Both the position numbers and the translations under genes were made by a program. From assembly GCF_963921235.1 (NCBI RefSeq), contig NW_026948167.1, positions 124,001-188,000 of the forward strand: a stretch of 64,000 bases of DNA, given 5' to 3'. Positions 17,624 to 17,663 of the stretch are shown here, in pieces. Position 1 is the first letter of the stretch, and each line of letters begins with the position of its first letter. Source of the stretch: Mobula hypostoma. Lineage: Eukaryota. The notes beneath the pieces were generated by a model. It was not told the DNA's origin, searched no databases, and worked only from the letters and a program-made list of their open reading frames with translations.

Positions 17624-17663
17624 GGCTAGACGTCTGGGTTTAATTATTTTATCGCTTTATGGC
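17624..17663 (+). promoter_or_regulatory. Hoxc8 early enhancer, conserved 3' core (Smad, Hox and Cdx sites)
   Basis: GGCTAGACGTCTGGGTTTAATTATTTTATCGCTTTATGGC versus the recalled mammalian core GGCTAGACGTCTGGGCTTAATTGTTTTATGG. Syntenic position between C9 and C8. Confidence 0.8.

What the first reader, a model, noticed from the sequence alone, without database searches (positions are those of the whole stretch)
17624..17663. Hoxc8 early enhancer core retained, with Cdx-site turnover
Seen: GGCTAGACGTCTGGG and TTAATT are intact. The position of the recalled Cdx site TTTTATGG reads TTTTATCG, but a TTTATGG appears 9 bp further 3'. The element is 8.3 kb from the ATG (about 3 kb in mouse) and has LINE and SINE insertions within 0.3-0.9 kb. 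Established: this enhancer sets early posterior Hoxc8 expression, and its variation has been linked to differences in axial pattern. Inference: compensatory binding-site turnover, which implies continued selection.
Basis: partly seen in the sequence, partly recalled or inferred. Interest (0 to 1): 0.7.

Follow-up and report, generated by a model that had tools for sequence, protein, structure and literature searches.

The report
Devil-ray Hoxc8 early enhancer, Cdx-site swap
This is the devil-ray copy of a well-known vertebrate enhancer upstream of Hoxc8. One otherwise invariant Cdx-type site in it is broken, and a perfect replacement that arose earlier in rays sits 8 bp away, which is a tidy but fairly ordinary case of probable binding-site turnover.

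Summary
The window is a ray HoxC cluster (Hoxc9-Hoxc8-Hoxc6). Its Hoxc9 exon 1 is 100% identical to the protein named for Mobula hypostoma.

The block at 17536-17760 is the true orthologue of the Hoxc8 early enhancer. It lies between Hoxc9 and Hoxc8 and aligns in order with deer, gar, elephant shark, sevengill shark and electric ray. GGCTAGACGTCTG is invariant in all six.

The 3' Cdx-type heptamer TTTATGG is intact in the other five taxa. Only here does it read TTTATCG (G>C at 17653). Contigs from three other organism labels (99% and about 95% identical) show the same state, so it is not an assembly error.

The second TTTATGG (17656-17662) is older than the loss. Two of its defining substitutions are shared with Narcine, which kept the old site and degraded the new one to TTTATAG.

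The pattern fits gain, redundancy, then reciprocal loss. Compensation itself is inferred, not shown, because only two ray lineages could be compared.

Constraint on the whole element is independently supported: 76% identity to Narcine where Hoxc8 synonymous sites are saturated. This is a new member of a known kind, of moderate interest.

The parts
17536..17760 (+). Orthologue of the Hoxc8 early enhancer: the whole block conserved with the electric ray. The deep-vertebrate core is about 17602-17667.
   Evidence: BLAST to Narcine L001:1482-1732 gives 76% over 258 bp, E 4e-43. To Callorhinchus it gives 76% over 63 bp, E 8e-5, and to deer 81% over 47 bp, E 5.5e-4. The six-taxon alignment A1 is colinear, with 45 invariant columns.
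17552..17561 (+). 5' TTTAT/TTTAC-type element. It reads TATTTACAAC here, at the position of the mammalian 5' TTTTATGG.
   Evidence: In alignment A1 columns 24-33, TTTA is invariant in six taxa. Shark and chimaera have TTTATAAC and both rays have TTTACAAC.
17624..17636 (+). Invariant core GGCTAGACGTCTG. It contains the palindrome AGACGTCT (17628-17635), two Smad-type GTCT/AGAC boxes.
   Evidence: Identical in all six taxa. The Smad reading rests on general knowledge of SBE motifs and on the title of Gaunt 2017, cited.
17640..17646 (+). TTAATTA homeodomain-type site. AATT is invariant.
17648..17654 (+). Ancestral 3' Cdx-type heptamer, now TTTATCG. G>C at 17653; the neighbouring changes C>T at 17647 and T>C at 17655 are also Mobula-specific.
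   Evidence: TTTATGG in deer, gar, Callorhinchus, Heptranchias and Narcine. Lineage assignment. The state is shared by contigs of three other organism labels.
17656..17662 (+). Derived Cdx-consensus heptamer TTTATGG, followed by C. TTTATGGC matches 8 of 9 positions of the CDX2 ChIP-seq motif TTTATGGCT.
   Evidence: One search gives the position. One search shows A>T at 17658 and A>G at 17662 shared with Narcine, and G at 17661 ancestral. The motif is from PMC9508567. The chance of such a gain is 0.2-0.4% in neutral simulation.
15307..15427 (+). Partial duplicate of the enhancer's 5' half plus part of the GA tract. It lacks the Smad-type core and both Cdx sites.
   Evidence: 81% identical to 17488-17608. 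It shares Mobula-specific states not seen in Narcine, so the duplication is lineage-specific.
17338..17527 (+). GA-rich microsatellite abutting the enhancer's 5' edge.
   Evidence: Shorter GA-rich tracts sit at the same place in Narcine, Heptranchias and Callorhinchus.
18013..18138 (.). Very high-copy interspersed repeat 0.35-0.5 kb 3' of the core.
   Evidence: Summed contig depth is 10^4-10^6 in four runs, with hundreds of contigs running on into unlike sequence.
10440..13313 (+). Hoxc9: exon 1 about 10440-10943, homeobox exon 13086-13313. This is the upstream neighbour.
25993..28134 (+). Hoxc8, the presumed target gene. Exon 1 is 25993-26425 and exon 2 is 27815-28134, with a GT-AG intron that holds two N gaps.
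   Evidence: It is 91% (exon 1) and 98% (exon 2) identical to Narcine Hoxc8, with dN/dS 0.03.

Best explanation
The block at 17536-17760 is the devil-ray (Mobula) orthologue of the vertebrate Hoxc8 early enhancer. It still lies between Hoxc9 and Hoxc8 in a repeat-invaded HoxC cluster and is still under purifying selection.

By analogy with mouse, it most likely integrates Gdf11/Smad input at the invariant AGACGTCT core with Cdx and posterior homeodomain input at the adjacent AT-rich sites, to time early posterior activation of Hoxc8. This mechanism is inferred from mouse, not shown here.

The history of the Cdx sites is as follows:
1. In the ray stem lineage, two substitutions turned the neighbouring TTTAATGA into a second TTTATGG, 8 bp downstream of the ancestral site.
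2. With two equivalent sites present, each lineage lost one.
3. Mobula broke the ancestral site (G>C at 17653) and kept the new one.
4. The electric ray kept the ancestral site and degraded the new one (G>A).

Cdx input is therefore probably maintained through the new site. This is binding-site turnover by gain, redundancy and loss.

Shown: orthology, polarity of the substitutions, fixation across related taxa, and constraint on the element. Inferred: Cdx binding, equivalence of the two sites, and enhancer activity in rays.
For: Orthology and position:
- Hox genes were identified.
- The exact or near-exact 15-mer occurs once, in the same orientation, between Hoxc9 and Hoxc8 in Narcine, Callorhinchus, gar, deer and Heptranchias.
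- The alignment is colinear and the BLAST hits are significant.

Constraint:
- The element is 76% identical to Narcine over 258 bp.
- Most of the remaining Hoxc9-Hoxc8 intergenic DNA (apart from the blocks at 20376-21474 and 25196-25986) gave no BLAST hit above 110 bits to Narcine.
- Hoxc8 synonymous sites are saturated (dS about 1.0, dN/dS 0.03).

Polarity:
- 17658 A>T, 17662 A>G and 17664 C>G are shared by both rays against Heptranchias and Callorhinchus.
- 17653 G>C is Mobula-only.
- The G>A in site 2 is Narcine-only.

Gain unlikely by chance: 0.2-0.4% of neutral simulations create a new TTTATGG within 25 bp. The heptamer occurs only 16 times in 128 kb of both strands.

Not an error: contigs from three other organism labels (99% and about 95% identical) show no difference between 17561 and 17684.

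Literature:
- The mouse enhancer carries Cdx, Foxa2, Hox and HMG motifs, and its deletion alters timing (PMC10885077).
- Gdf11/Smad and Cdx cooperate on it (Gaunt 2017, title only).
- The CDX2 ChIP motif is TTTATGGCT (PMC9508567).
Against: - Only two independent ray lineages could be compared, so 'reciprocal loss' rests on one event in each.
- Mobula's 5 changes in columns invariant in the other taxa are within the range seen in the other five taxa (1-7). At the enhancer's average rate, a 7-bp site would be hit in 65-87% of neutral simulations.
- The simulation p-value for the gain is post hoc, because the motif was chosen after it was seen.
- No binding, accessibility or reporter data exist for any ray.
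- The forkhead and HMG-type elements of the mammalian 5' half are not conserved in rays, so the element's logic may differ from mouse.
- TTTATGG is also a good site for posterior Hox proteins, not only Cdx.
Confidence: 0.55

Rival explanations
1. Neutral drift in a relaxed cluster. The enhancer is conserved overall, but the G>C at 17653 is just one of several lineage-specific hits. The second TTTATGG is a chance by-product of an AT-rich homeodomain-site cluster. There is no functional compensation, and Cdx input may simply be weaker or supplied by the 5' TTTAC element.
For: Mobula has 5 odd-one-out changes in otherwise invariant columns, against 1-7 in the other taxa. Counts of lineage-specific changes are similar in Mobula and Narcine (12 vs 8). 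Elasmobranch HoxC clusters are repeat-invaded and described as released from structural constraint (preprint 10.1101/2025.06.08.657570). The 5' forkhead and HMG-type elements are already diverged in rays.
Against: A perfect heptamer arising within 25 bp is rare under neutrality (0.2-0.4%). After the gain, each ray keeps exactly one perfect site. The heptamer was invariant in all five other taxa compared, from deer to electric ray. The core region stays identical across contigs that are about 5% diverged elsewhere.
Confidence: 0.3
2. Functional change rather than compensation. Moving the Cdx or posterior-Hox site 8 bp away from the Smad-type core, with two extra substitutions around it, changes the affinity or geometry. 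This would alter the timing or anterior limit of early Hoxc8 expression in devil rays.
For: Three Mobula-specific substitutions cluster within 9 bp (17647, 17653, 17655). An 8-bp shift is less than a helical turn. Variation in this enhancer alters reporter boundaries between mouse and chicken and other vertebrates (PMC4009813). The 5' half was also partially duplicated in this lineage.
Against: There are no expression data for any ray. The new site predates Mobula and is shared in origin with the electric ray. Deleting the mouse enhancer changes timing only, not the domain (PMC10885077).
Confidence: 0.12
3. Assembly or sequencing error, or a private polymorphism, at 17653.
For: The window has six N gaps, and the cluster is repeat-rich.
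Against: Single contigs from three other organism labels span 17530-18050 and show no difference anywhere between 17561 and 17684.
Confidence: 0.01

Closest known systems
Mammalian (mouse-type) Hoxc8 early enhancer, the 200-bp element of Shashikant and Ruddle. It is represented here by the deer orthologue L004:3190-3340.
   Same: It has the same position (upstream of Hoxc8, downstream of Hoxc9) and the same orientation. The GGCTAGACGTCTGGG 15-mer is identical. The order is the same: 5' TTTA(T/C) element, central region, Smad-type core, AATT site, TTTAT site.
   Different: The distance to the ATG is 8.3 kb rather than 2.7 kb. The 3' TTTATGG is broken and replaced 8 bp downstream. The mammalian TGTTTGT and AACAAAAC elements are not conserved. 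Overall identity is only 48% outside the core.
Chondrichthyan orthologues of the same element: Callorhinchus milii L002:5690-5850, Heptranchias perlo L006:17185-17350 and Narcine bancroftii L001:1482-1732.
   Same: They share chondrichthyan features: TATTTAYAAC, TAGACAG, and a GA-rich tract on the 5' side. Narcine shares the 8.4-kb spacing and the substitutions that built the second heptamer.
   Different: All three keep the ancestral TTTATGG. Shark and chimaera have TTTAATGA where Mobula has TTTATGG, and Narcine has TTTATAG there.
Binding-site turnover under stabilising selection, the paradigm set by Drosophila even-skipped stripe 2 (from general knowledge; not retrieved here).
   Same: An ancestral site is lost in one lineage while an equivalent site lies nearby. 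The gain precedes the loss, and the overall element is retained.
   Different: Conserved output and factor binding, which define the paradigm, are untested here. Only one site pair and two lineages are available.
Previously described lineage-specific changes in this enhancer: the baleen-whale element deletion and the chicken and teleost divergences (cited in PMC4009813).
   Same: These are also lineage-specific alterations of a named cis-element inside an otherwise conserved enhancer.
   Different: Those cases are deletions or divergence without a documented adjacent replacement. None concerns rays, whose HoxC cluster was first documented only in 2025.

Membership tests
Hoxc8 early enhancer (vertebrate conserved non-coding element) | Lies in the Hoxc9-Hoxc8 intergenic region, upstream of Hoxc8 | tested here: met
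   Hoxc9 ends at 13313, the enhancer is at 17536-17760, and the Hoxc8 ATG is at 25993, all on the + strand. The arrangement is the same in five other taxa.
Hoxc8 early enhancer (vertebrate conserved non-coding element) | Sequence homology to the mammalian enhancer | tested here: met
   The 15-mer is an exact match, and identity to deer is 81% over 47 bp, E 5.5e-4. The six-taxon alignment is colinear with 45 invariant columns.
Hoxc8 early enhancer (vertebrate conserved non-coding element) | Closely spaced motifs for Cdx, forkhead (Foxa2), Hox and HMG factors (PMC10885077) | tested here: inconclusive
   Homeodomain AATT, a TTTAC element and one TTTATGG are present. The ancestral 3' Cdx site is broken. 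The forkhead and HMG-type motifs of the mammalian 5' half are not conserved in rays. No position weight matrices were available.
Hoxc8 early enhancer (vertebrate conserved non-coding element) | Drives early posterior neural-tube and mesoderm expression in a reporter assay | not testable with these tools
   This needs a transgenic assay.
Compensatory binding-site turnover | Loss of an ancestral, otherwise conserved site in the focal lineage | tested here: met
   G>C at 17653. The heptamer is invariant in the five other taxa, and the change is shared by three related organism labels.
Compensatory binding-site turnover | A derived equivalent site nearby, absent in outgroups | tested here: met
   TTTATGG at 17656-17662. 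Shark and chimaera have TTTAATGA, gar has TTTAGAG and deer has TTAAATA at that place. The gain is assigned to the ray stem.
Compensatory binding-site turnover | Both sites bind the same factor, and enhancer output is maintained | not testable with these tools
   This needs EMSA or ChIP and reporter assays. The only support is a consensus match to the CDX2 ChIP motif TTTATGGCT.
Compensatory binding-site turnover | The pattern exceeds the neutral expectation | tested here: inconclusive
   The gain is rare in neutral simulation (0.2-0.4%), but that test is post hoc. The loss is not unusual. Only two ray lineages are informative.

The most novel reading that the evidence does not exclude
A second Cdx site was gained in the ray ancestor and then resolved in opposite ways in electric rays and devil rays. 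On this reading the Hoxc8 early enhancer stays under stabilising selection inside an otherwise eroding, repeat-invaded elasmobranch HoxC cluster. The 8-bp shift of the Cdx site relative to the Smad-type core in Mobula would retune the timing or boundary of Hoxc8 activation in a group with a highly modified axial and pectoral body plan.
Probability: 0.12. Interest if true: 0.65.

Novelty: new member of a known kind. Interest (0 to 1): 0.4.

Why it matters
Elasmobranch HoxC clusters were long thought to be deleted. They are now known to be shrunken, GC-rich and full of repeats, and a ray HoxC cluster was first documented only in 2025.

This result shows that a classic, functionally dissected enhancer survives there with its Smad-type core letter-perfect. 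That argues that Hoxc8 regulation, not just the coding sequence, is still maintained in some rays.

The paired site states in Narcine and Mobula give a small, clean, testable example of gain-then-loss turnover at single-nucleotide resolution in a vertebrate developmental enhancer. It does not change how the enhancer or site turnover is understood.

Tried and rejected
- **Pristis pectinata (L005).** The region that should hold the enhancer falls exactly in a 100-N assembly gap (14556-14655), between blocks colinear with window 13334-13872 and 24296-24729. It is uninformative, and I did not try to fill it.
- **Rhincodon typus (L007).** This contig holds 9.3 kb upstream of Hoxc8 exon 1. It has no core within 3 mismatches, and BLAST gave only low-complexity hits. 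The enhancer is either further upstream or lost; I cannot tell which.
- **Mobula birostris, Carcharodon and Mustelus.** The loci were found, but no DNA was served. The shorter isoforms P0002 (Pristis Hoxc8) and P0155 (M. birostris Hoxc9) are not on record.
- **Primary enhancer papers.** PMC307625, PMC28062, PMC19342, PMC37997 and Gaunt 2017 are not held. The A-E element names could therefore not be mapped from the source, and I avoided using them.
- **RNA and repeat checks.** No tRNA-like head and no Rfam family were found in 13.3-26 kb. No other copy of the flanking repeats exists inside the window.
- **Run X8 (organism C).** It gave no contig over the enhancer, and the share of words it holds comes only from the high-copy repeat. 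This is no evidence of absence.

Full report
**What is in the window.**
- GGCTAGACGTCTGGG at 17624-17638
- TTAATT at 17640-17645
- TTTTATCG at 17647-17654
- TTTATGG at 17656-17662

The 15-mer is unique in the 64 kb, with about 0.06 matches expected at up to two mismatches.

The ORF list and translations show three Hox genes on the + strand:
- Hoxc9: exon 1 about 10440-10943, homeobox exon 13086-13313.
- Hoxc8: ATG at 25993, exon 1 to 26425, exon 2 at 27815-28134, GT-AG intron.
- Hoxc6: the 50.6-51.0 kb ORF and the homeobox exon ending at 55188.

**Whose genome it is.**
Hoxc8 exon 1 is closest to proteins named for the electric ray Narcine bancroftii (91%), then the sawfish Pristis pectinata (90%), then Callorhinchus (71%). 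Hoxc9 exon 1 is 100% identical to the protein named Hox-C9-like of Mobula hypostoma and 99% identical to that of M. birostris.

The window is therefore a devil-ray HoxC cluster. The literature frames this:
- Elasmobranch HoxC was once thought deleted and is now known to be repeat-invaded.
- A ray HoxC cluster was first documented in 2025 in the red stingray, with C3, C6, C9, C11 and C12 listed (preprint 10.1101/2025.06.08.657570; PMC13097845).

**Orthology.**
I fetched the Hoxc8 or Hoxc9 loci of Narcine (L001), Callorhinchus (L002), gar (L003), red deer (L004), Pristis (L005), Heptranchias (L006) and Rhincodon (L007).

The 15-mer, exact or with 1-2 mismatches at its 3' end, occurs once on the + strand between Hoxc9 and Hoxc8 in Narcine, Callorhinchus, gar, deer and Heptranchias. 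In deer it lies 2.7 kb before the called gene, which matches the position given for mouse.

BLAST of the whole Mobula intergenic region gave these hits:

| Taxon | Identity | Length | E-value |
|---|---|---|---|
| Narcine | 76% | 258 bp | 4e-43 |
| Callorhinchus | 76% | 63 bp | 8e-5 |
| Deer | 81% | 47 bp | 5.5e-4 |

A six-taxon MAFFT alignment (A1) is colinear. The shared order is a 5' TTTA(T/C) element, a central region, the invariant GGCTAGACGTCTG, an invariant AATT, and the TTTAT heptamer. It has 45 invariant columns. This is the Hoxc8 early enhancer.

**Constraint on the element.**
Between Mobula and Narcine, Hoxc8 coding sequence has dN/dS 0.03 and synonymous sites are saturated (dS about 1.0). 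Outside the enhancer, only a 1.1-kb block (20376-21474) and the proximal promoter (25196-25986) align between the two intergenic regions. A 258-bp non-coding block at 76% identity is therefore evolving several-fold slower than neutral. This supports continued selection on the element without relying on the Cdx argument.

**The Cdx sites: polarity.**
In alignment A1 the 3' heptamer is TTTATGG in deer, gar, chimaera, sevengill shark and electric ray. Only Mobula has TTTATCG.

I took columns where Heptranchias and Callorhinchus agree as the ancestral state. On that basis:
- Mobula-specific changes around the site are C>T at 17647, G>C at 17653 and T>C at 17655.
- The next eight bases are TTTAATGA in both shark and chimaera.
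- Both rays share A>T at 17658, A>G at 17662 and C>G at 17664.
- Mobula keeps the ancestral G at 17661, and Narcine alone has G>A there.

By parsimony the ray ancestor carried TTTATGG-T-TTTATGG-C. Mobula then broke the first copy, and Narcine weakened the second to TTTATAG.

The order of events is gain first, loss later. The new site plus its 3' C matches 8 of 9 positions of the CDX2 ChIP-seq motif TTTATGGCT (PMC9508567).

**Is it real DNA, and how old is it?**
Public runs from several coded organism labels hold this stretch. I laid contigs on 17530-18140 (the tool accepted the stretch):
- A contig of organism B is 99% identical to the window.
- Contigs of organisms F and H are about 95% identical, with 25-28 differences plus two insertions.
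- All three span the enhancer, and none differs from the window anywhere between 17561 and 17684.

The TTTATCG plus TTTATGG state is therefore not an assembly error. It predates the split of taxa that are about 5% diverged in the flanks. Because the names are coded, I cannot say which species they are.

**Is it more than chance?**
The evidence is mixed.

For:
- TTTATGG occurs only 16 times on both strands of the window.
- I mutated the shark or chimaera sequence neutrally at the observed per-site change (14-25%). A new perfect heptamer appeared within 25 bp of the old one in only 0.2-0.4% of runs.

Against:
- That test is post hoc.
- The same simulation destroys a 7-bp site in 65-87% of runs.
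- Mobula's count of changes in columns invariant in the other five taxa (5) is within the range seen in the other taxa: Narcine 1, Heptranchias 4, Callorhinchus 3, gar 7, deer 7.
- Mobula and Narcine have similar numbers of private changes (12 vs 8).
- Only two ray lineages are informative, so 'reciprocal resolution' rests on one event in each.

**Mechanism.**
This part is inferred. In mouse, the 200-bp enhancer carries closely spaced Cdx, Foxa2, Hox and HMG motifs, and deleting it delays Hoxc8 activation (PMC10885077). Its variants shift reporter boundaries between species (PMC4009813). Gdf11/Smad signalling and Cdx cooperate on it (title of Gaunt 2017, seen; the paper is not held).

The only 13-mer invariant from deer to devil ray contains AGACGTCT, two inverted Smad-type boxes (my reading, from general knowledge). 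The likeliest working model has Smad complexes on that core and a Cdx or posterior-Hox protein on the adjacent TTTAT site. In Mobula that partner site has moved 8 bp outward.

The mammalian forkhead-like and HMG-like motifs in the 5' half are not conserved in rays. The ray element may therefore rely more on the 3' module.

**Other features.**
- *Partial duplicate.* The 5' half of the enhancer plus part of its GA tract is duplicated 2.18 kb upstream (15307-15427, 81% identity). The copy shares Mobula-specific states that Narcine lacks, so it is a lineage-specific duplication. It stops short of the Smad-type core. An earlier scan note (s1-144989) flagged the same module.
- *Flanking repeats.* 18013-18138 is a very high-copy interspersed repeat. 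18240-18490 is SINE-like, with only weak support. The 5' flank is microsatellite.
- *Spacing.* The 8.3-kb distance to the ATG is shared with Narcine (8.4 kb), so the expansion is not devil-ray specific.

**What could not be done.**
- Pristis has an assembly gap exactly where the enhancer would be.
- The whale-shark contig shows no enhancer within 9.3 kb.
- The original PNAS papers are not held, so I did not assign the historical element letters.

**Verdict.**
Orthology is near certain. The turnover pattern is real and its polarity is resolved. Functional compensation is plausible, at roughly even odds, but untested. This is a new member of a known kind of element showing a textbook mode of enhancer evolution, and its interest is moderate.

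Noticed in passing
window 15307-15427: Partial duplicate of the enhancer's 5' half, 81% identical to 17488-17608. It shares Mobula-specific bases, lacks the Smad-type core and both Cdx sites, and lies 107 bp after an N gap.
   Followed up: yes
window 25993-28134: Hoxc8 is intact (GT-AG intron, full homeodomain, dN/dS 0.03 vs Narcine). No 100% protein hit was returned for it, so it may be unannotated in this species, and its intron holds two N gaps. The red stingray HoxC inventory in the 2025 preprint lists no Hoxc8, so retention seems to differ among myliobatiform rays.
   Followed up: partly
window 20376-21474 (and 20790-20863): A second conserved non-coding block lies between the enhancer and Hoxc8. 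It is 66% identical over 1.1 kb to Narcine L001:4980-6065, and colinear. A 74-bp piece also matches Callorhinchus L002:6948-7020 (E 0.001). Its function is unknown.
   Followed up: no
window 25196-25986: The proximal Hoxc8 upstream region is conserved with Narcine (66% over 846 bp) and Pristis (68% over 1070 bp). It is presumably the promoter and 5' UTR.
   Followed up: no
window 17338-17527; L001:1470-1500; L006:17125-17200; L002:5670-5690: A GA-rich tract directly abuts the 5' edge of the enhancer in all four chondrichthyans. It is greatly expanded in Mobula, to about 190 bp.
   Followed up: no
window 18013-18138: Extremely abundant interspersed repeat. Summed contig depth is up to about 10^6 in each of four runs from different organism labels.
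   Followed up: partly
L005:14556-14655 (Pristis pectinata): A 100-N assembly gap replaces everything between the Hoxc9 3' region and the Hoxc8 promoter. As a result the sawfish intergenic region looks only 2.5 kb long and appears to lack the enhancer.
   Followed up: yes
window 17647-17655, minus strand: The G>C that breaks the Cdx heptamer creates GCGATAAAA on the minus strand, which contains a GATA-type core (GATAA). This may be coincidence.
   Followed up: no
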